The notes beneath the pieces are model-generated. The model had not been told where the DNA came from and made no database searches. It was given only the letters and a program-made list of their open reading frames with translations. Both the position numbers and the translations under genes were made by a program. Of a stretch of 64,000 nt of DNA, positions 13,482 to 20,666 are shown in pieces; the stretch's first letter is position 1; each line of letters starts with the position of its first letter. The stretch lies in the sequence record NC_070966.1. One strand, 5' to 3'.

Positions 13482-13520
13482 GATAGAAGGCTAAAAGACG
13501 CGAATTATTCGCCTAGATTG

Positions 13521-13548
13521 AGCGAACTTAGCGTCTGATAGCCTTCCT
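13521..13548 (+). promoter_or_regulatory. conserved intergenic motif, copy 4 (3' arm of a long hairpin at 13486-13546)
   Basis: AGCGAAC ttagcgtctga TAGCCTTCCT; inverted partner GAAGGCTA..AGACGC..TTCGC upstream. Confidence 0.55.
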
Positions 13549-13565
13549 TCTTTGTCAGACGGTGA

Positions 13566-13641
13566 TGGCTAGTAGCTCAGTTGGTAGAGCATTGCACTGT
13601 TAATGCGACGGTCGTAGGTTCGAGCCCTACCTAGTCAGCCA
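13566..13641 (+). tRNA. tRNA-Asn(GTT)
   Basis: TGGCTAG/CTAGTCA-GCCA; loop CTGTTAA. Confidence 0.95.
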
Positions 13642-13664
13642 GTCTGCTTATAAAGGATTCTTAG

Positions 13665-13871
13665 ATGGAACGTGTATATAGTTTAGTTTATGTTGCTATC
13701 ATTACAGCAGGTGTAGTCGCAGGTATCACAGCACTCACTCTACCTTTGTACTATGGTACGATTGATAGTAATCGTAAACAATCTGAGTTGTCAAGTAAGT
13801 GTGTTGACTCAGGAGGGTCCTGGATCGTAGGTCCTAATGGATACTACCAGTGTATTGCTGGTCGTAAGTAA
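13665..13871 (+). CDS. small membrane-anchored protein
   Basis: N-terminal TM helix; C-terminal C..SGG.W......C motif. Confidence 0.7.
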   Translation: MERVYSLVYVAIITAGVVAGITALTLPLYYGTIDSNRKQSELSSKCVDSGGSWIVGPNGYYQCIAGRK

Positions 13872-13880
13872 TGTGAATAA

Positions 13881-13972
13881 GGATAGTTGGCTGAGTCTGG
13901 TCTAAGGCGCTCGACTTGAAATCGAGAGGACGTGAGAGCGTTCCGTGGGTTCGAATCCTACACTATCCGCCA
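13881..13972 (+). tRNA. tRNA-Ser(TGA)
   Basis: GGATAGT/ACTATCC-GCCA; loop CTTGAAA; long variable arm. Confidence 0.93.
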
Positions 13973-13990
13973 TATTTATTATTGAGTATA

Positions 13991-14377
13991 ATGGATCAAA
14001 TAGTAAAGAAAAAGAGGACTAGACGTCCTGTTTCTTTAGAGACTAGAATGAAATTATCTGCTGCTCTTAAGGGTAAACCTCAGAGTAAAGTTTCTAATGA
14101 AGAGATTTTTGCAGATAATACTACTCATCCTAGACATCGTATTAAAGAAAGAATAATTCGAGATAATCTTATTCCATACGAGTGTGCAATCTGTGAAAAT
14201 GATGGTACATGGAATGGTGAACCTTTATCTTTACATCTAGACCATGAAAATGGTAAGAATAATGATAATCGTCTTGAGAATCTTAGATTCTTATGTCCTA
14301 ACTGTCATAGTCAAACAGATACTTATGCAGGTAAGAATAAGAAACGTAAGAGAATCAAGAGAGAAGAGCGTGTTTAG
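13991..14377 (+). CDS. HNH homing endonuclease (start moved to 13991; the track start at 13916 lies inside tRNA-Ser)
   Basis: CAICEN...LSLHLDHENGKNNDNRLENLRFLCPNCHSQT. Confidence 0.88.
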   Translation: MDQIVKKKRTRRPVSLETRMKLSAALKGKPQSKVSNEEIFADNTTHPRHRIKERIIRDNLIPYECAICENDGTWNGEPLSLHLDHENGKNNDNRLENLRFLCPNCHSQTDTYAGKNKKRKRIKREERV

Positions 14378-14441
14378 TTCAATGGTAGAATGCGAGTCTC
14401 CAAAACTTGATATGAGAGTTCGATTCTCTCAGCACGTGCCA
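14368..14441 (+). tRNA. tRNA-Trp(CCA)
   Basis: GCGTGTT/AGCACGT-GCCA; loop CTCCAAA. Confidence 0.9.
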
Positions 14442-14477
14442 ATTCTAGATATTAAATAAACACTTGGATAAGAAGAA

Positions 14478-15122
14478 ATGTCAAAAGCAAGAGATTTACT
14501 TAATACCTTGAATGAAGCTGATGATTGGAATATTCACAAGAAAGAGTTGAAGAAGGCTGGATTTGATCTCCATCCTAATCATCACGCTAATGTGAATATC
14601 AATCGTAACAACTATCCTCAGAATCGTGATATCTATACGGGTAAAATGAGTAATGGTCATACGATGGTTATTACTCAATTAACTCCGATTGATATGGATC
14701 GATACGCATCTGTTAAGGATGCTTCTGGTAAATTTATCAAGCACTACTACGTAGCTCCTGTTAAACCTACACTGAGTAAAAGTCCTGTATTAAAGTCTAC
14801 AGCGATCGGTAATGATCCTAAGACAGTACTTGAAGAAATCAAAGCAGCTATGAGAATGGTTCCAGAAGGACGTCAGGCTACCTTTAGATCTGTTGAACAG
14901 AATGGTAAGTACTATGAGTTCGATGTCAGATACTGGGGAAGCTGGGAAGTTCCTGATGGTGAAGACGATGATGGAGACTACGACTTTGAAGTCTTGACAT
15001 CTAAATCGTCTAAGTCACTTCAGAACATTGTTGAGCCTATCATTAAGAAATATCCAAGTCTAGATATCTACTATCAAACTGGAGAGAAGAATTATATTAC
15101 TGTTCATGCTACTGTAAAGTAG
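14478..15122 (+). CDS. hypothetical protein, MSKA...NE tag family
   Basis: MSKARDLLNTLNE N-terminus. Confidence 0.8.
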   Translation: MSKARDLLNTLNEADDWNIHKKELKKAGFDLHPNHHANVNINRNNYPQNRDIYTGKMSNGHTMVITQLTPIDMDRYASVKDASGKFIKHYYVAPVKPTLSKSPVLKSTAIGNDPKTVLEEIKAAMRMVPEGRQATFRSVEQNGKYYEFDVRYWGSWEVPDGEDDDGDYDFEVLTSKSSKSLQNIVEPIIKKYPSLDIYYQTGEKNYITVHATVK

Positions 15123-15132
15123 TTGACAGTAT

Positions 15133-15217
15133 GTCGGTATGGCGGAATTGGTAGACGCCCTGGTTTTAGGTACCAGTGTCGAAAGACGTGTAGGTTCGAG
15201 TCCTATTACCGACACCA
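15133..15217 (+). tRNA. tRNA-Leu(TAG)
   Basis: GTCGGTA/TACCGAC-ACCA; loop TTTAGGT; long variable arm. Confidence 0.95.
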
Positions 15218-15223
15218 AATTAT

Positions 15224-15358
15224 GACTTGATGTTGCGAAAGAAATGGTTACTTCGTATTCCAAACGAGAAATGTAGGTATCGAATCCTGCTATCCTAATA
15301 GGATATCGTCTAAGATAGGACGCTAAAATTTCCATTTCTGACACTATCTCATCAAGTC
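15224..15358 (+). ncRNA. Y-RNA-like unit 1 (permuted tRNA-Gly-like module)
   Basis: GACTTGATG-TTGCGA...TATCT-CATCAAGTC; inner AGAAATGG/CCATTTCT; loop ATTCCAA, then T arm, TATCC-TAATA-GGATA, then D arm. Confidence 0.75.
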
Positions 15359-15366
15359 TCATATTC

Positions 15367-15449
15367 AGATCTTGACGTTGCGACTAGTATCGGATACTTC
15401 GCTTTGGTTGCTAAAAACTCCGATGCAATATACTATCTCGTCAAGATCT
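15367..15449 (+). ncRNA. Y-RNA-like unit 2 (short; no T/D arms)
   Basis: AGATCTTGACG-TTGCGA...TATCT-CGTCAAGATCT; inner GTATCGGA/TCCGATGC; apical GC-TTTGGTT-GC. Confidence 0.7.
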
Positions 15450-15459
15450 TTCAGTTTAT

Positions 15460-15604
15460 CCTAACGTTGCGAATTAAACAGTTACTTCGATATCAAGCAG
15501 AAGGTCAATGGTTCGAATCCATTCATGCGACACGCGTTGCATGTAGCTCAGTTGGTTAGAGCGTCCGCCACCACAAGATCTGTTTAAGTCATTATCTCGT
15601 TAGG
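15460..15604 (+). ncRNA. Y-RNA-like unit 3 (permuted tRNA module)
   Basis: CCTAACG-TTGCGA...TATCT-CGTTAGG; TTAAACAG/CTGTTTAA; AATGG-TTCGAAT-CCATT, CATGCGAC/GTTGCATG, TAGCTCAGTTGGTTAGAGC. Confidence 0.8.
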
Positions 15605-15613
15605 TCCTTATAA

Positions 15614-15758
15614 CCTAGTGTTGCGATCGGTACAACTTCATCGCATTGTAAGCCCTGTGTCATTGGTTCAAATCCAATTCCTCCGTCCATCTATCGGAGG
15701 ATAGCTCAGTCTGGTAGAGCAAGGAAAGTATGTTGTATCAATATACCATCTCACTAGG
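15614..15758 (+). ncRNA. Y-RNA-like unit 4 (permuted tRNA-Thr-like module)
   Basis: CCTAGTG-TTGCGA...CATCT-CACTAGG; loop ATTGTAA; ATTGG-TTCAAAT-CCAAT, TCCTCCG/CGGAGGA, TAGCTCAGTCTGGTAGAGC. Confidence 0.8.
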
Positions 15759-15896
15759 ATCCTTATCTCATCCACCAACCTCGGTGTAAGAGTGGAAAGA
15801 GTTACGTGATCGTATGAGAATACGATCACAGTCATTTAGGTCATGTACCATGTGTACAAGGATCATTCGAAGGTGCTCGTCATCTTCAGCAAATAA

Positions 15897-16040
15897 TGTA
15901 GAGTTGCGAATATATCAAGTTCATCGCTTACCATATACCAAGCGGGTAGCTCAGTGGTTAGAGCACTAGGATGTAACAGTCGTAGAGGTCGTCGGTTCGA
16001 ATCCGACTCTAACTTCTTGATATAGACTTATCTCTCTACA
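15897..16040 (+). ncRNA. Y-RNA-like unit 5 (tRNA arms in normal D-anticodon-T order)
   Basis: TGTAGAG-TTGCGA...TATCT-CTCTACA; TATATCAAG/CTTGATATA; D arm TAGCTCAGTGGTTAGAGC precedes T arm GTCGG-TTCGAAT-CCGAC. Confidence 0.75.
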
Positions 16041-16049
16041 ACTTTTATA

Positions 16050-16184
16050 TGTACTGTTGCGACTAATACGGTTACTTCGTTGCAAATGAAACATAGGTTC
16101 GAATCCTATCCAGAGGATTGTCGTAAGATGACATCTGGCTGAGCATTGGTGAGCTCATCTCCGTATTAACTACATCTCAGTACA
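16050..16184 (+). ncRNA. Y-RNA-like unit 6 (permuted tRNA-Cys-like module)
   Basis: TGTACTG-TTGCGA...CATCT-CAGTACA; TAATACGG/CCGTATTA; loop TTGCAAA; ATAGG-TTCGAAT-CCTAT, CCAGA/TCTGG, TGAGC/GCTCA. Confidence 0.78.
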
Positions 16185-16195
16185 ATTACAATTCG

Positions 16196-16350
16196 TACCG
16201 TTGCGAATGATATGAATACATCGCTGTAGAACCGACGTCGTAAGACATGCTAGTTCAAGTCTAGCTCTCCGTCCCAATACTATGACGGAGATGGTGAAAT
16301 TGGTAGACACATCGGTAGATAAATCTTCATATCGGCTTACAATCTCGGTA
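16196..16350 (+). ncRNA. Y-RNA-like unit 7 (permuted type-II tRNA-Tyr-like module)
   Basis: TACCG-TTGCGA...AATCT-CGGTA; TGATATGAA/TTCATATCG; CTGTAGA, variable arm, GCTAG-TTCAAGT-CTAGC, TCTCCGTC/GACGGAGA, TGGTGAAATTGGTAGACAC. Confidence 0.8.
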
Positions 16351-16360
16351 TATCTTAGAC

Positions 16361-16385
16361 GCTATGTTGCGATAGTCCTCATAGC
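16361..16385 (+). promoter_or_regulatory. minimal Y-stem hairpin in the Ro60 5' leader
   Basis: GCTATG-TTGCGA-TAGTCCT-CATAGC, ending 20 nt before the Ro60 ATG. Confidence 0.55.
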
Positions 16386-16405
16386 ATTATCATAGGGAAA
16401 ATGTC

Positions 16406-17974
16406 ATGGCTTCGATCAATAATAAGTCAGTTGCTAATCTTGCACGTACGGTTGCTCCTAAGGCAGTTGTAGCACCTCGTACATTCACTGGTTTATCTCA
16501 TAACATTCGTAACAATAATGGTGCGATGGCGTATGATATCACTCCTATCGAGCAATTGAGACGTACTGTTCTCTCTTGCATGCTCTGGGAGGATTCTGCA
16601 TATGAGTCTGGTGAACAGATTGCTAATCGTATTGAAAGATTGATCGGAGAGTGTGATCCCTCTGATGTAGCACATCTTGCTCGTGAAGCAAGACATATCA
16701 TGAAGCTACGTCATGTTCCTCTCTTTATGTGCATCACGATGCTGAAGTATCCCGAACATAAGAAATATGTTCGTAAGACACTCGCATCAGTTATTGAGCG
16801 TCCTGATGAGCTTGGTCAAGCTCTCGCTCTCTACTGGAAGGATGCTCTTTCTCCTGCTCGTACTACTGAAGATACTGAAATCGGACCTCGAGTTACTTAC
16901 GTTTCTCAGAGAAAGTCTGATCTGAATCTTCCTCTCCAACTACGTAGAGGTCTTGAAGATGCTCTACAGAAGTTTGACTCTTATCAGTTGAAGAAGTACC
17001 TTATGAAGGACAAGCCTGTCTCTATGGCTGACATTCTTCGTATCGTCCACCCTAAGGGTAAGACTGATGAGATCAAAGCTACCTATGGCGAAATCGTCAA
17101 GGGTACTGCTACTGCACCTGATACATGGGAGTCTCGTCTCTCATCTTCTGGTAGATCTGAGAAAGCTACAATCTTCACAGATATGCTCGAACGTAACAAA
17201 TTAGGTGCAATGGCTCTACTGAAGAATCTGCGTGGTATGACTGAGGCTGGTGTTGATACCAATCTTATTAATACTGCGATTCAGAAGATGAATACTGAAC
17301 GTGTTCTTCCTTTCAGATTCCTCACAGCTGCTCGTCATGCTCCTCAGTTCAAGTCTAGTCTCGGTGAGGCTATGCTAAAATCTCTGAAGGACATTCAGAA
17401 TCTGCCTGGTCATACAGTACTACTGATTGACATCTCAGGTAGTATGGGTGGACGTATTTCAGGTAAGTCTGATCTGAGACGTATTGATGCTGCAGCTGCT
17501 ATTGCTATCATGTTGAAGGAAATTTGTCAGTCTTCTGATATGTTTGTCTTCAATTATGGTACGTATCAAGTACGTAACGATAACGTCTTCTGCGTGAATC
17601 AACCTACTGCTAACAATCACGGATACTCCAGGATTGTTGAGAGTACGAGGATCTACAATTACGAAGAAGATGCTGTAGTGAAGAGAGGATTTGATCTATC
17701 AGATCTTATCGTCAATTCAGTAGTTGGTGGAACTGATCTCCAGCAAGCTGTCAGTTATATCAATAATACTGTAGAGTATGATCGTATGATTATCTTTACA
17801 GATGACGAATCATCTACTGTTCCGCCAGCTCCTAGAGATCTTTCCTATTCGATCAACGTATCGACTGGAAACTATGGAGTGACGTACGGTGACTATGTCC
17901 ACATCAACGGATTCTCTGAAGGTGTGATTGGCTATGTCACTGAGTACGATAAGTACGTGAAGAGTCAGAATTAA
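16406..17974 (+). CDS. rsr: Ro60/Rsr ribonucleoprotein (TROVE domain plus vWA)
   Basis: N-terminal 'NNNGAMAY...EQLRRTVLSCMLWEDSAYESG', 'LKLRHVP', 'PDTWESRLS', 'ALLKNLRGM', 'RVLPFRFLTA'; vWA 'LIDISGSM...GGTD...IIFTDDES'. Confidence 0.92.
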   Translation: MASINNKSVANLARTVAPKAVVAPRTFTGLSHNIRNNNGAMAYDITPIEQLRRTVLSCMLWEDSAYESGEQIANRIERLIGECDPSDVAHLAREARHIMKLRHVPLFMCITMLKYPEHKKYVRKTLASVIERPDELGQALALYWKDALSPARTTEDTEIGPRVTYVSQRKSDLNLPLQLRRGLEDALQKFDSYQLKKYLMKDKPVSMADILRIVHPKGKTDEIKATYGEIVKGTATAPDTWESRLSSSGRSEKATIFTDMLERNKLGAMALLKNLRGMTEAGVDTNLINTAIQKMNTERVLPFRFLTAARHAPQFKSSLGEAMLKSLKDIQNLPGHTVLLIDISGSMGGRISGKSDLRRIDAAAAIAIMLKEICQSSDMFVFNYGTYQVRNDNVFCVNQPTANNHGYSRIVESTRIYNYEEDAVVKRGFDLSDLIVNSVVGGTDLQQAVSYINNTVEYDRMIIFTDDESSTVPPAPRDLSYSINVSTGNYGVTYGDYVHINGFSEGVIGYVTEYDKYVKSQN

Positions 17975-17981
17975 GTAGTGA

Positions 17982-18009
17982 GAATTGGGAGTGAAATACC
18001 TCCCAATTC
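17982..18009 (+). terminator. stem-loop after Ro60 (terminator or processing site)
   Basis: GAATTGGGAG-TGAAATAC-CTCCCAATTC; weak U tract. Confidence 0.45.
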
Positions 18010-18022
18010 CATTTATCTAAAT

Positions 18023-18106
18023 GCCCACTTGTCGGAATTGGTAGACGACCGAGACTTAAAATCTTGTGCCTATGGCGTACCGGTTCGAGTCCGGTAGTGG
18101 GTACCA
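18023..18106 (+). tRNA. tRNA-Leu(TAA)
   Basis: GCCCACT/AGTGGGT-ACCA; loop CTTAAAA. Confidence 0.95.
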
Positions 18107-18224
18107 TCAAACTCAACCCCAAAATCACCTAGCCAAACTCATTATAAATCATAGGCTTCATGAAGAGACCGATGTATCAGATAAGCTAACAAGCTATCTT
18201 GATTTCGTAGAAGGGATTCTCAAC

Positions 18225-18398
18225 ATGCCTAGTCTTGACTTTGCACAGATAGTACCTGTTGAAGCGACTATTCTGAAAATTGTAGTCATGCCAAAGGATG
18301 GGACTTGTTCAGTCTGGTATAGTATTCGCAACACTGTACATAAGACTGATCTAATCAGAGAAGAAGACAAATGGACGAGAGTAGTAACAGTACATTAG
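18225..18398 (+). CDS. small hypothetical protein (start moved from 18066, which lies within tRNA-Leu)
   Basis: SD 'gaaggga' before the ATG at 18225. Confidence 0.5.
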   Translation: MPSLDFAQIVPVEATILKIVVMPKDGTCSVWYSIRNTVHKTDLIREEDKWTRVVTVH

Positions 18399-18622
18399 AT
18401 GAGTTAGATATCCGTATCTGGATTGCCCTATCTAACTTAAAAAGTGCTGTTAATGCTAAAATGAAAGATAGAGGTATATCAAACTATCTTGTTGATCTGA
18501 ACCTTAAGATCAGCGAACGAGATATTTTGACAGACGGAAAATTTCACTCTGAATTTCCCATACCTGACTACAAAGATATTGATCCTCAAATCCTGAGCGT
18601 TTACATGAGCGAGGATCGTTAG
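18371..18622 (+). CDS. hypothetical protein
   Basis: Overlaps the previous ORF end; followed by a terminator. Confidence 0.6.
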   Translation: MDESSNSTLDELDIRIWIALSNLKSAVNAKMKDRGISNYLVDLNLKISERDILTDGKFHSEFPIPDYKDIDPQILSVYMSEDR

Positions 18623-18650
18623 TCAATTAGTCAATGTATTGTAATGAATT

Positions 18651-18701
18651 AGCCTAGTTAATATTGATTCTTCGAATTAGTATTAACTAGGCTTTCTTTT
18701 T
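18651..18701 (+). terminator. intrinsic terminator ending the tRNA island
   Basis: AGCCTAGTTAATA...TATTAACTAGGCT followed by TTCTTTTT. Confidence 0.8.
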
Positions 18702-18767
18702 GTCCGATAGGTTCAGTTACGCATTATAAGGGATTCCTCCTTGAAGGTTCCCTCTTGGAGAAGTTAG

Positions 18768-20666
18768 ATGCTAGAATTTGCAGGTAAGTATGAGGATCTG
18801 AAGGGTATCATACCCTCATCTGTTCATACAATCGAGGATCTGGAGAATCAGGTCATCGCATGGGCTAAGGCCTATTACGAGAAAGAATCAGAGTTGATCT
18901 CTGATGAAGAATTCAATCTCGTTACGGAGTATATTGCAGAATTCTACCCTAATAGTCTCGTTCTGAAGACTGGATGGGGCTATAGACCTGAGGCTACTGA
19001 CCATCTTCAGGAGTATCCTCACAAGATTCACGCTGGATCTCTCGCTAAGATCAAGTATGCGGACGTTAAGTCTGGTAATACGACTTATGATCCTCTGTTA
19101 CGATTCTCTCTGATGCCTAAGGGTGATGGAGGTAGTGTCGTTGCATACTACCACGAAGGCCTCCTGGAAAGAGCTTTGTCTCGAGGAGATGGAAATGTAG
19201 GTCTCGATATTACCAAAAATCTGGTAGCATCTGGATCTCTTCCTACCAAGATCGAGAACAAGAATATCGAATGGGTACGAGCAGAATTGATGCTCACCTG
19301 GACTGACTATGAAGCTATCGGGGGTAAGCATCCTCGTAACAAGGCAGTAGGTCTTAGCCAGTCTGAGAATGCTGATCCTGAAGAACTGGCATGCTTGAAG
19401 TTCGTAGCTTACCAGTCTAATCTGGACTTCGACTTCGGTATGGAATTGACTCTTCTCAGGAATCTTGGATTCACTACTGTCAATCATGTTGAGATGAACT
19501 GGTCTGAATTTCTTCAGAAGATTGACGATCAAGTATTCCTGAAATTGTTGAATGAGGATTATCCGACGGATGGTCTTGTTCTTCGATTCAGTGACGATGC
19601 TGCAATCGCATTCAAGTTTCCTGATGAACGAGTTAAGACCAAGATCAAAGACATTGAATGGAATCTGTCAAGAACTGGTCGTATGGTTCCTAAGGCAATC
19701 TTAGAACCTGTCAATCTTGCAGGAGCTACAATCTCCAGAGCGACCTTGAATAACTATGAATACTTGACTGAACTCGGATGCGGTCCAGGATCTGAAGTTG
19801 AGATCATCCGATCTAATCTGATTATCCCTAAGATTGTGAAGGTTCTGAATAAGGAACCTGCAAGACGACCACTTGTATGCAACAGGTGCTATGAAGTACT
19901 GAAGGTCGTAAAGACTGATTTGATGTGCGTCAATGAGATGTGCGCATGTCGAGTTATGTCGTCAGTCAATCGTCTCTTCTCATTGACGAAACCTGATGGT
20001 ATCGGTGGTAGTGCTTGTACGACTCTCGTTAATAGTCTTGCAATCGATAGTTGGGAGACTGCTAAGTCAAGATTCATAGATCAAGACGTGAGTGGTTTGG
20101 ATAAGATCTTCGGTACCAAGACTGAGATTAAGATTCAAGAAATGATCTCGAAGATCAAGAATCTGAATCAGATAATCACTGTCAAGGGTGTACTTTATCT
20201 CGCGAATATTCCTAAGCTTGGTAACTCAAGTATAGGTCCTATCGCTGAGAATGTCTCAGTGGATGCATTCTTGACTGCTATCCGTGAAGATGAGATTCCT
20301 GTTTCATGGAAGCAATACTGTGCATCTGAGCCAGCATTCAACAATCTTCGTAAGTCGATTCAACGAATTCGACTGATATTAGACTTCCTTAATTGGAAGG
20401 TTAATGCTGTAGTGAAAGTCGAGAAAGTAGAAACTCGTCTGAAGTACTGCATGACTGGAACATTCAGTAAGAAGAGATCTGAGCTACAAACTGAGTTCTC
20501 TAAGTTAGGTCTTGAATTCGTCGATGTCAAGAAAGCTCAAGTCTTGATGTGGGATGGAGAAGATCAGAAGAATAAGTATCATACTGCCAAGAAGCTCGGG
20601 ATTGAGATTATCTCCGAGAAGGAATTCAGAAGTCGATATGTCCAATCAGAAGAAGCCATCGTATAA
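18768..20666 (+). CDS. ligA: NAD-dependent DNA ligase
   Basis: KxDG (PKGDG), 'ALSRGDGNVG', 'PTDGLV', 'AIAFKF', OB fold 'SRTGRMVPKAILEPVNLAGATISRATLNN', Cys zinc finger, C-terminal BRCT. Confidence 0.95.
   Translation: MLEFAGKYEDLKGIIPSSVHTIEDLENQVIAWAKAYYEKESELISDEEFNLVTEYIAEFYPNSLVLKTGWGYRPEATDHLQEYPHKIHAGSLAKIKYADVKSGNTTYDPLLRFSLMPKGDGGSVVAYYHEGLLERALSRGDGNVGLDITKNLVASGSLPTKIENKNIEWVRAELMLTWTDYEAIGGKHPRNKAVGLSQSENADPEELACLKFVAYQSNLDFDFGMELTLLRNLGFTTVNHVEMNWSEFLQKIDDQVFLKLLNEDYPTDGLVLRFSDDAAIAFKFPDERVKTKIKDIEWNLSRTGRMVPKAILEPVNLAGATISRATLNNYEYLTELGCGPGSEVEIIRSNLIIPKIVKVLNKEPARRPLVCNRCYEVLKVVKTDLMCVNEMCACRVMSSVNRLFSLTKPDGIGGSACTTLVNSLAIDSWETAKSRFIDQDVSGLDKIFGTKTEIKIQEMISKIKNLNQIITVKGVLYLANIPKLGNSSIGPIAENVSVDAFLTAIREDEIPVSWKQYCASEPAFNNLRKSIQRIRLILDFLNWKVNAVVKVEKVETRLKYCMTGTFSKKRSELQTEFSKLGLEFVDVKKAQVLMWDGEDQKNKYHTAKKLGIEIISEKEFRSRYVQSEEAIV

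What the first reader, a model, noticed from the sequence alone, without database searches (positions are those of the whole stretch)
16361..16405. Minimal Y-stem hairpin in the Ro60 leader: possible autoregulatory operator
Seen: an eighth GTTGCGA sits in a 25-nt hairpin (GCTATG-TTGCGA-TAGTCCT-CATAGC) with no cargo. It ends about 10 nt before the GGGAAA purine tract and 20 nt before the Ro60 ATG. Inference: free Ro60 not titrated by the Y RNAs could bind its own mRNA leader and repress translation, matching protein level to RNA level, as ribosomal proteins do through RNA mimicry.
Basis: partly seen in the sequence, partly recalled or inferred. Interest (0 to 1): 0.7.

Follow-up and report, generated by a model that had tools for sequence, protein, structure and literature searches.

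The report
Stem-only Y RNA unit before rsr
A 25-base hairpin just upstream of a Rhizobium phage's Ro60 gene is a real, stripped-down eighth copy of the phage's Y RNA stems; it could let Ro60 sense its own level, but nothing yet shows that it does.

Summary
The window is Rhizobium phage RHph_TM30. The hairpin is exactly as described: arms at 16361-16366 and 16380-16385, with GTTGCGA at 16366-16372. It ends 8 nt before the AGGGA ribosome-binding site and 20 nt before the rsr (Ro60) ATG.

It is not a chance hairpin. It is the eighth unit of a tandem Y-RNA array. It follows unit 7 by the usual 9-nt spacer, has its own perfectly paired arms, and carries the exact 5' motif. It lacks the inner stem, the UACUUCG motif and any module.

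In about a third to a half of 87 non-redundant rsr loci with a detectable upstream Y RNA, a complete Y RNA (usually a short one) ends 10-45 nt from the start codon. The hairpin therefore sits in a standard "proximal Y" slot.

Autoregulation is plausible but unsupported:
- The hairpin is invariant only within one shallow genus, which is uninformative.
- It is absent from the nearest other Ro60 loci.
- It is thermodynamically weak.
- Forming it hardly changes predicted access to the ribosome-binding site.

I favour a cis Ro60-binding site on the rsr transcript (0.4) over a neutral remnant of a deleted unit (0.35).

The parts
16361..16366 (+). 5' arm of the hairpin (GCTATG); its last G is the first base of GTTGCGA
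   Evidence: It pairs perfectly with 16380-16385. Its sequence differs from the arms of all seven other units.
16366..16372 (+). GTTGCGA, the clade's version of the bacterial Ro60/Rsr recognition motif (GNCGAA type)
   Evidence: eight + strand copies in 15232-16372; the equivalent motif in other loci is UGGYGWAG. Motif definition from PMC4201824.
16373..16379 (+). Rest of the 13-nt loop (TAGTCCT). Its last bases, CCT, occupy the place of the conserved AUCU that precedes the 3' arm in units 1-7.
   Evidence: all seven full units have ATCT before the 3' arm, while the mini has TCCT.
16380..16385 (+). 3' arm of the hairpin (CATAGC)
16352..16360 (+). 9-nt A/U-rich spacer between Y unit 7 and the mini unit
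   Evidence: the same length class as the other inter-unit spacers (8-10 nt).
16386..16405 (+). 20-nt stretch between the hairpin and the start codon, with the Shine-Dalgarno-like AGGGA at 16394-16398
   Evidence: Invariant in TM30, TM40, TM39 and Y65.
16406..17974 (+). rsr, the Ro60 homologue (522 aa, TROVE + vWA)
15224..16351 (+). Array of seven Y-RNA-like units: Y1 15224-15358, Y2 15367-15449 (short, no module), Y3 15460-15604, Y4 15614-15758, Y5 15897-16040, Y6 16050-16184, Y7 16195-16351. A 138-nt unrelated insert lies at 15759-15896.
   Evidence: Sub-threshold Rfam YrlA hits in Y3 and Y4 and a tRNA-model hit in Y5.
15133..15217 (+). tRNA-Leu(tag), 6 nt upstream of Y1. The locus lies inside a co-oriented array of 20 tRNA genes.
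17982..18009 (+). Terminator-like hairpin after the rsr stop codon, followed by tRNA-Leu(taa) at 18023-18106

Best explanation
The hairpin is the eighth and last unit of the phage's Y-RNA array, reduced to the part that Ro60 recognises. It keeps the terminal stem, the GUUGCGA strand and a pyrimidine run before the 3' arm. It probably arose by an internal deletion that removed the inner stem and module.

It occupies the 'proximal Y' slot. In many other rsr loci that slot holds a complete short Y RNA ending 10-45 nt from the start codon.

No promoter or terminator is evident between the array and rsr. The hairpin therefore lies on, or at the very 5' end of, the rsr message.

My preferred mechanism is that it works as a cis Ro60-binding site on that message. 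Ro60 not occupied by the seven full Y RNAs binds it. Sitting 8 nt from the Shine-Dalgarno sequence, the bound protein hinders 30S docking and so lowers its own synthesis.

Shown: homology to the Y stems, the position, and co-orientation with the array. Inferred: co-transcription, Ro60 binding, and the sign of the effect. Stabilisation of the message by a bound 5' cap is the alternative outcome.

The confidence of 0.4 is for a cis Ro60-binding site of either sign; repression specifically is about 0.2. That the element is a paralogue of the Y stems is about 0.9.
For: Motif and architecture:
- GTTGCGA is exact, the 6-bp arms are perfect, and the spacer is the regular 9 nt.
- All eight units have different arm sequences yet keep pairing, always with an innermost G-C pair. 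The mini unit has therefore kept its stem and motif while its sequence diverged as far as any other unit.
- A random internal deletion would rarely leave exactly the stem, the motif and the pyrimidines. I estimate well under 1% of possible deletions.

Placement:
- The chance of such a hairpin falling in this slot is about 8e-4 (plus my arithmetic).
- The 3' arm ends 8 nt before the SD. Complete proximal short Y RNAs in other loci end 1-12 nt before theirs.
- Of 87 non-redundant loci with a detectable upstream Y RNA, 28 have the proximal unit ending within 30 nt of the start and 42 within 45 nt.

Literature:
- Ro60 contacts mainly the 5' strand of the motif (PMC4201824).
- A phage Ro60 binds a minimal stem-bulge-stem RNA with Kd about 17 nM (PMC12135203).
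- In M. smegmatis, a short Rsr-bound YrlB lies between YrlA and rsr and is cut from the same precursor.

Transcription signals: promoter-like sites in 13500-19000 are no more frequent than in shuffles, and no terminator-like site lies between tRNA-Leu and the rsr stop.
Against: - There is no binding or expression data.
- The unit lacks two features that every other unit has: the inner stem (stem-bulge-stem) and the UACUUC(G) motif. That motif is the most widely conserved Y-RNA signature, found in 139 of 164 loci.
- The 3' pre-arm is UCCU, not the AUCU that is invariant in units 1-7.
- The hairpin is weak. Its predicted occupancy is 0.09-0.84 depending on flanks, and forcing it changes the cost of opening the ribosome-binding site by at most 1.5 kcal/mol. 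Any effect would have to be purely steric.
- It is not found in the nearest other Ro60 loci, and mini hairpins are not enriched in other leaders.
- Its invariance within the genus is uninformative.
- In L002, Y units also sit in front of genes other than rsr. Adjacency to a start codon can therefore be simple genome compaction.
Confidence: 0.4

Rival explanations
1. Neutral remnant. The last Y unit of the array suffered an internal deletion. What is left is a non-functional 25-nt scar that Ro60 does not bind usefully. It sits near the ribosome-binding site only because the last unit always did.
For: - The proximal-Y slot is a general architecture, so the position needs no special explanation.
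- The unit lacks the inner stem and UACUUC(G), which all other units retain.
- The 3' pre-arm deviates from AUCU.
- The hairpin is weak and often out-competed in predicted folds.
- It is confined to one shallow genus and absent from the nearest relatives.
- Its zero substitutions are matched by whole neighbouring units, for example Y4 with 0 in 145 nt.
Against: - A random deletion rarely preserves exactly the stem and motif.
- The arms are unique, so this is not a recent copy of another unit, yet they are still perfectly complementary and the 7-mer is intact.
- The remnant idea needs the deletion to be recent but older than the TM30/Y65 split.
Confidence: 0.35
2. Free-standing minimal Y RNA. 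The hairpin is cut out of the precursor like the other units. It then acts in trans as a module-less ligand that occupies the Ro60 outer surface without tethering any partner.
For: - It has the same spacer on its 5' side as every other unit, and an A/U-rich stretch on its 3' side.
- Y RNAs upstream of rsr are processed from one precursor in M. smegmatis.
- Module-less hairpin Y RNAs are known: YrlB and Yrn2.
Against: - At 25 nt it is far shorter than any described Y RNA (80-130 nt in PMC4201824).
- Cutting on its 3' side would leave the rsr message with a leader of 20 nt or less.
- It lacks the long stem that protects known Y RNAs.
Confidence: 0.1
3. Ro60-independent leader hairpin. It acts as a 5' stabiliser or processing boundary for the rsr message after the array is cleaved in the spacers, and its resemblance to the Y stems is only historical.
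For: - Two of the nearest relatives also have hairpins without the motif just upstream of the ribosome-binding site (L003 and L004).
- The locus lies inside a tRNA/Y array that is presumably matured by endonucleases.
Against: - A 6-bp stem with a 13-nt loop is a poor protective hairpin.
- It does not explain why the exact 7-mer is kept in the loop.
- The 5' end of the message is unknown.
Confidence: 0.1

Closest known systems
[quoted passage not shown] 2014, PMC4201824)
   Same: They are encoded next to rsr on the same strand. In M. smegmatis, YrlB lies between the tRNA-like YrlA and rsr. They have a terminal stem plus the Ro-recognition motif and no tRNA-like module. I found equivalent short proximal units ending 10-22 nt before the rsr ATG in many phage and bacterial loci.
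   Different: Those RNAs form long hairpins with an inner stem and a small loop, and were shown to bind Rsr. I measured 62-87 nt for the analogous short units found in the loci here. The TM30 element is 25 nt, has no inner stem and no UACUUC motif, and has no experimental support.
YrlA family (Rfam RF02553), the tRNA-like Y RNAs
   Same: It belongs to the same tandem array as units that give YrlA and tRNA-model hits. It shares their closing-stem architecture and 5' motif.
   Different: It gives no Rfam hit at E <= 1. It has none of the T-arm or D-arm module that defines YrlA.
Minimal Yrl2 mimic bound by Thermus phage phiLo Ro60 (PMC12135203)
   Same: It involves a phage Ro60 and a small RNA that keeps only the motif-bearing stem. 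That RNA is bound at about 17 nM, and point changes in CGAA weaken binding 3-4 fold. The natural Yrl1 and Yrl2 also lie upstream of the Ro60 gene.
   Different: The mimic keeps a stem on both sides of the bulge, whereas the TM30 hairpin has the motif in a terminal loop. The mimic is a designed probe, not a natural leader element. The TM30 motif reads CGAU, not CGAA, although Y4 shares CGAU and Y2 and Y6 read CGAC.
Translational operators that mimic the protein's main RNA ligand: E. coli thrS operator, ribosomal-protein leaders, T4 RegA/gp32, MS2 coat-protein hairpin (my own knowledge)
   Same: It is a copy of the protein's normal RNA target placed at or just upstream of its own ribosome-binding site.
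   Different: In those systems, binding, repression and conservation of the operator are all demonstrated. Here none is shown, and the element is not conserved outside one genus. I found no report of Ro60 regulating its own message.

Membership tests
Bacterial Y RNA (YrlA/YrlB type) | Encoded close to rsr, usually on the same strand | tested here: met
   It lies 20 nt upstream of the rsr ATG on the same strand and is the last element of the array.
Bacterial Y RNA (YrlA/YrlB type) | 5' and 3' ends pair to form a closing stem | tested here: met
   The arms are a perfect 6 bp. The closing stems of Y6 and Y7 are 6-7 bp.
Bacterial Y RNA (YrlA/YrlB type) | Ro-recognition motif (GNCGAA-like) on the 5' strand next to the stem | tested here: met
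   The clade form GUUGCGA is exact. This form, UUG[C/U]GA, is shared by the Ro60 subfamily loci L002, L003 and L167. It departs from the published GNCGAAN0-1G by having U where that motif has its first G.
Bacterial Y RNA (YrlA/YrlB type) | Second stem beyond the motif (stem-bulge-stem) | tested here: not met
   Only 7 nt lie between the motif and the 3' arm. The predicted inner pairing is two weak pairs.
Bacterial Y RNA (YrlA/YrlB type) | UACUUC(G) motif 8-14 nt after the Ro motif, and an apical loop or module | tested here: not met
   The motif is present in units 1-7 (as variants in some) and in 139 of 164 loci. It is absent from the mini unit.
Bacterial Y RNA (YrlA/YrlB type) | Length of roughly 70-150 nt | tested here: not met
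   The mini unit is 25 nt. The other units in the window are 83-157 nt.
Bacterial Y RNA (YrlA/YrlB type) | Bound by Ro60/Rsr, with Ro60-dependent accumulation | not testable with these tools
   This needs EMSA, RIP and Northern blots.
Autoregulatory translational operator by RNA mimicry | Leader element resembles the protein's main RNA ligand | tested here: met
   It shares the closing stem, the exact 5' motif and the pyrimidine pre-arm with the seven Y units.
Autoregulatory translational operator by RNA mimicry | Element overlaps or abuts the ribosome-binding site | tested here: met
   The stem ends at -21 from the ATG, and the SD starts 8 nt after it. Whether the element is on the mature message is unknown.
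Autoregulatory translational operator by RNA mimicry | Protein binds the leader and represses translation | not testable with these tools
   Folding shows only that forming the stem does not itself change access to the ribosome-binding site.
Autoregulatory translational operator by RNA mimicry | Operator conserved, ideally with covariation, in homologous loci | tested here: not met
   It is invariant in four genomes 97-100% identical, which gives no covariation. It is absent in L002, L003, L165, L166 and L167. Mini hairpins occur at 0.39 per kb in leaders against 0.67 per kb in coding controls.
Intrinsic terminator or attenuator | G+C-rich stem followed by a U run | tested here: not met
   The scan does not report it. 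The stem has two G-C pairs at each end and is followed by AUUAUCAUAG.

The most novel reading that the evidence does not exclude
Ro60 controls its own synthesis through a stripped-down Y-RNA stem in its message. More generally, the Y RNA that abuts the rsr ribosome-binding site in a third to a half of the loci with a detectable upstream Y RNA acts in cis as the sensor. This would match Ro60 output to the pool of free Y RNAs. It would be the first autoregulatory circuit described for Ro60.
Probability: 0.2. Interest if true: 0.7.

Novelty: new variant of a known kind. Interest (0 to 1): 0.4.

Why it matters
Phage and bacterial Ro60-Y RNA systems are still poorly understood. It is not known how Ro60 and its RNAs are kept in balance, nor what the minimal natural Ro60 ligand is.

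A natural 25-nt stem-only unit would define that minimum and offers a simple probe.

If Ro60 binds the hairpin on its own message, that would give Ro60 the feedback logic known for ribosomal proteins and threonyl-tRNA synthetase. It would also suggest why the last Y RNA so often touches the rsr ribosome-binding site.

If the hairpin is only a deletion scar, it is a minor footnote on how Y-RNA arrays turn over.

Tried and rejected
1. RNA switch. The 5' arm can also pair with CAUAG at 16391-16395 or with CAUGGC at 16405-16410, which contains the start codon. I asked whether stabilising the Y stem would open or close the ribosome-binding site. Constrained partition-function folding in four contexts changed the opening cost by at most 1.5 kcal/mol, and fold z-scores were not significant. 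Rejected.

2. Giant Y unit enclosing the ribosome-binding site. ATCTCATAAC at 16495-16504 matches the 3' consensus at a typical unit span. However, it encodes the conserved S-x-N of the protein, the arm has a C-A mismatch, and the predicted long-range pairing buries the motif rather than displaying it. Not adopted.

3. Ro60 regulon of mini stems. The only other motif-plus-arm hairpins in the window with arms of at least 6 bp (33547, 39860) lie inside long ORFs. Rejected.

4. Closer relatives for covariation. All of these searches failed to find any:
- a single-protein scan of IMG/VR found nothing;
- profile scans of IMG/VR, GTDB genomes and JGI metagenomes gave only 41% identity or less;
- a DNA pattern scan for GTTGCGA plus TACTTCG gave only chance hits, with one distant TROVE locus;
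- the best homologue's contig (P0002) could not be read.

5. Substitution-rate test within the genus. The result is uninformative because divergence is very uneven between units.

6. Own promoter for rsr. There is only a weak 9-of-12 sigma-70-like match, at 16316-16343 inside Y7, and the number of such sites equals the shuffle expectation.

Full report
**Identity of the window.** Bases 15200-18000 are 100% identical to Rhizobium phage RHph_TM30 (207.6 kb). They are 97-99.8% identical to seven other phages (ten database records in all, two of them RefSeq duplicates). The three relatives whose records I read (TM39, TM40, Y65) are classified as Cuauhnahuacvirus, Kleczkowskaviridae. The ORF 16406-17974 encodes a 522-aa protein with TROVE and vWA domains, that is a Ro60/Rsr homologue. 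The locus sits inside a co-oriented array of 20 tRNA genes. tRNA-Leu(tag) ends 6 nt before the first Y unit, and tRNA-Leu(taa) starts 49 nt after the rsr stop codon.

**The observation.**
- AGGGA is at 16394-16398 and the ATG is at 16406.
- GTTGCGA occurs 15 times in the window against 4.3 expected. Eight copies lie on the + strand within 1.14 kb.
- A simple scanner recovers seven units in which a 6-11 bp terminal stem encloses GUUGCGA at the 5' side and AUCU at the 3' side. The 25-nt hairpin comes out as an eighth.
- Unit lengths are 83-157 nt. Spacers are 8-10 nt, except for a 138-nt insert between units 4 and 5. The spacer before the mini unit is 9 nt.
- Every unit has a different arm sequence but keeps pairing, always with an innermost G-C pair. 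The mini unit's arms are unique and perfectly paired.
- Shuffled windows give about 1.9 hairpins of this kind per 128 kb. The chance of one in this 54-nt slot on this strand is therefore about 8e-4.
- The element is real, and it is a paralogue of the Y stems.

**What it lacks.**
- All seven full units continue after the motif into an inner stem and a UACUUCG-like motif. Across 164 rsr loci, UACUUC is the most enriched upstream word, present in 139 loci.
- The mini unit has neither feature.
- Its 3' pre-arm is UCCU rather than the AUCU that is invariant in units 1-7. UCCU still fits the looser pyrimidine pattern of the wider family (UUCC, UUCU, UACU).
- It gets no Rfam hit.

**Motif homology.**
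- In distant loci the equivalent 5' motif is UGGYGWAG. This is the GNCGAAN0-1G motif that Chen et al. linked to Rsr binding and compared with the GGUCCGA contacted by Xenopus Ro60.
- The 511-529-aa Ro60 subfamily to which TM30 belongs uses UUG[C/U]GA, or CUGCGA, instead (L002, L003, L167).

**Thermodynamics.**
- Alone, the hairpin folds at -6.2 kcal/mol with z = -1.9.
- With flanks it is usually not the minimum-free-energy structure.
- Its ensemble probability ranges from 0.09 to 0.84 depending on where the RNA starts.
- Forcing it changes the cost of opening 16392-16419 by at most 1.5 kcal/mol.
- The hairpin is therefore not an RNA switch. Any effect on translation would have to come from a bound protein.

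**Comparative evidence, near relatives.**
- TM30, TM40, TM39 and Y65 are identical across 16352-16405.
- Divergence in the array is very uneven: Y7 14.6%, Y3 11%, Y4 0% and Y1 0.7%. Zero changes in 54 nt therefore carry no weight.

**Comparative evidence, next-nearest Ro60 genes.** These are only 44-50% identical.
- L002 has two full Y units and then a plain 42-nt leader.
- L003 has three Y units, a terminator-like hairpin and a motif-free hairpin.
- L167 has one Y unit and a 65-nt leader.
- L165 and L166 have no Y RNA in the short upstream sequence available.
- L004 is cut off 47 nt upstream of the gene.
- None has a mini Y stem.
- Across 148 distinct leaders from IMG/VR and GTDB, motif-bearing mini hairpins are no more frequent than in coding controls.
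- No closer relatives could be found in any collection.

**Comparative evidence, the proximal slot.**
- In many distant loci the element directly before rsr is a complete but short, module-less Y RNA of 62-87 nt. Its 3' arm ends 10-22 nt before the ATG and 1-12 nt before the Shine-Dalgarno sequence (for example L008, L015, L024, L029, L031, L051, L058, L062, L033).
- I examined 106 non-redundant loci with a confident start and at least 300 nt upstream. Of these, 87 have a detectable Y unit upstream.
- The proximal unit ends within 30 nt of the start in 28 loci (19 of them short type) and within 45 nt in 42 loci.
- This matches M. smegmatis, where the Rsr-bound YrlB lies between YrlA and rsr and both are cut from one precursor.
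- The TM30 hairpin ends 20 nt from the ATG and 8 nt from the SD, so it sits exactly in this slot.
- This cuts two ways. It explains the position without invoking an operator. It also shows that a Ro60-binding stem next to the rsr ribosome-binding site is a recurrent design.
- In L002, Y units also precede other genes, so adjacency may be plain compaction.

**Mechanism.**
- No convincing promoter or terminator separates the array from rsr. The gene is most likely expressed from a long tRNA/Y precursor. The hairpin is then in, or at the 5' end of, the rsr message. This is an inference.
- Ro60 contacts mainly the 5' strand of the motif.
- A phage Ro60 binds a minimal motif-bearing RNA at about 17 nM.
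- Binding to the mini stem is therefore plausible, though probably weaker than to full units.
- A roughly 60-kDa ring bound at -45 to -21 would lie within the region a 30S subunit contacts during initiation (my own knowledge). Negative feedback is therefore the most natural outcome. Protection of the processed 5' end is the alternative.

**Probabilities.**

| Explanation | Probability |
|---|---|
| Cis Ro60-binding site on the message | about 0.4 (roughly half of this for repression specifically) |
| Neutral deletion remnant | 0.35 |
| Free mini Y RNA | 0.1 |
| Ro60-independent leader hairpin | 0.1 |

The main argument against the remnant is the precision of what survives. The main argument for it is everything that is missing, together with the lack of conservation.

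**Known versus new.** Phage Ro60 genes with upstream Y RNAs, module-less Y RNAs and Y/rsr co-processing are all published. I found no description of a stem-only 25-nt unit, nor of Ro60 regulating its own message. The element is best classed as a new variant of a known kind, with an untested regulatory reading.

Noticed in passing
window 15759-15896: A 138-nt stretch interrupts the otherwise regular Y array between units 4 and 5. It has no GTTGCGA and contains a perfect 10-bp hairpin (15806-15815 with 15820-15829, loop GAGA). It differs at 6.5% of sites among the four genomes compared (all nine differences are in Y65). Its nature is unknown.
   Followed up: no
window 15224-16351 compared with L001, L358 and L359: Divergence among the four Cuauhnahuacvirus genomes is very uneven between Y units: Y7 14.6%, Y3 11%, Y5 5.6%, and Y1, Y2, Y4 and Y6 at 0-1.5%. 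In Y3, Y5 and Y7 the listed changes lie in the interior of the units, away from the terminal stems and motifs. The modules may be swapped or evolve fast while the Ro-binding stems stay fixed.
   Followed up: partly
window 15945-16009 (inside Y5): The module of Y5 scores above the Rfam tRNA gathering threshold (33.9 bits against 29), but ARAGORN does not call it. Y3 and Y4 give sub-threshold YrlA hits (36-37 bits against 69).
   Followed up: no
164 rsr loci (L001-L164), upstream 600 nt: The word UACUUC, lying 8-14 nt after the Ro motif, is present upstream of rsr in 139 of 164 loci and never in the coding control. It is more widespread than the published GNCGAA-type motif. It may mark a second contact with Ro60 rather than with the variable partner.
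   Followed up: partly
L002 3833, L003 716/842/990, L167 102; window array: The 511-529-aa Ro60 subfamily (TM30 and P0002-P0009) uses UUG[C/U]GA and a 3' (A/U)(U/A)CU. The common 435-445-aa Ro60s use UGGYGWAG and GUUCC. Protein subfamily and RNA motif therefore appear to co-vary.
   Followed up: partly
window 16380-16410: CAUAG recurs at 16380 and 16391, and CAUGG at 16405 (this one includes the start codon). The 5' arm of the hairpin therefore has three possible partners. Modelling showed no meaningful switch.
   Followed up: yes
window 16495-16504: ATCTCATAAC inside rsr codons 30-33 matches the 3' consensus of a Y unit plus the mini unit's 3' arm with one mismatch. It lies at a typical unit span (132 nt) from the motif. 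It is probably a coincidence helped by the conserved S-x-N codons.
   Followed up: partly
L002 1085-1145 and 3088-3220: In this related phage contig, further Y-like units of the same motif class lie 0.9 and 2.9 kb upstream of rsr, in front of other small genes. Y units can therefore be scattered like tRNA genes rather than confined to the rsr leader.
   Followed up: no
L003 1150-1215: Between the Y array and rsr there is a terminator-like hairpin followed by a T run. An 11-bp motif-free hairpin then lies directly before the ribosome-binding site. This is a different leader design in a relative.
   Followed up: no
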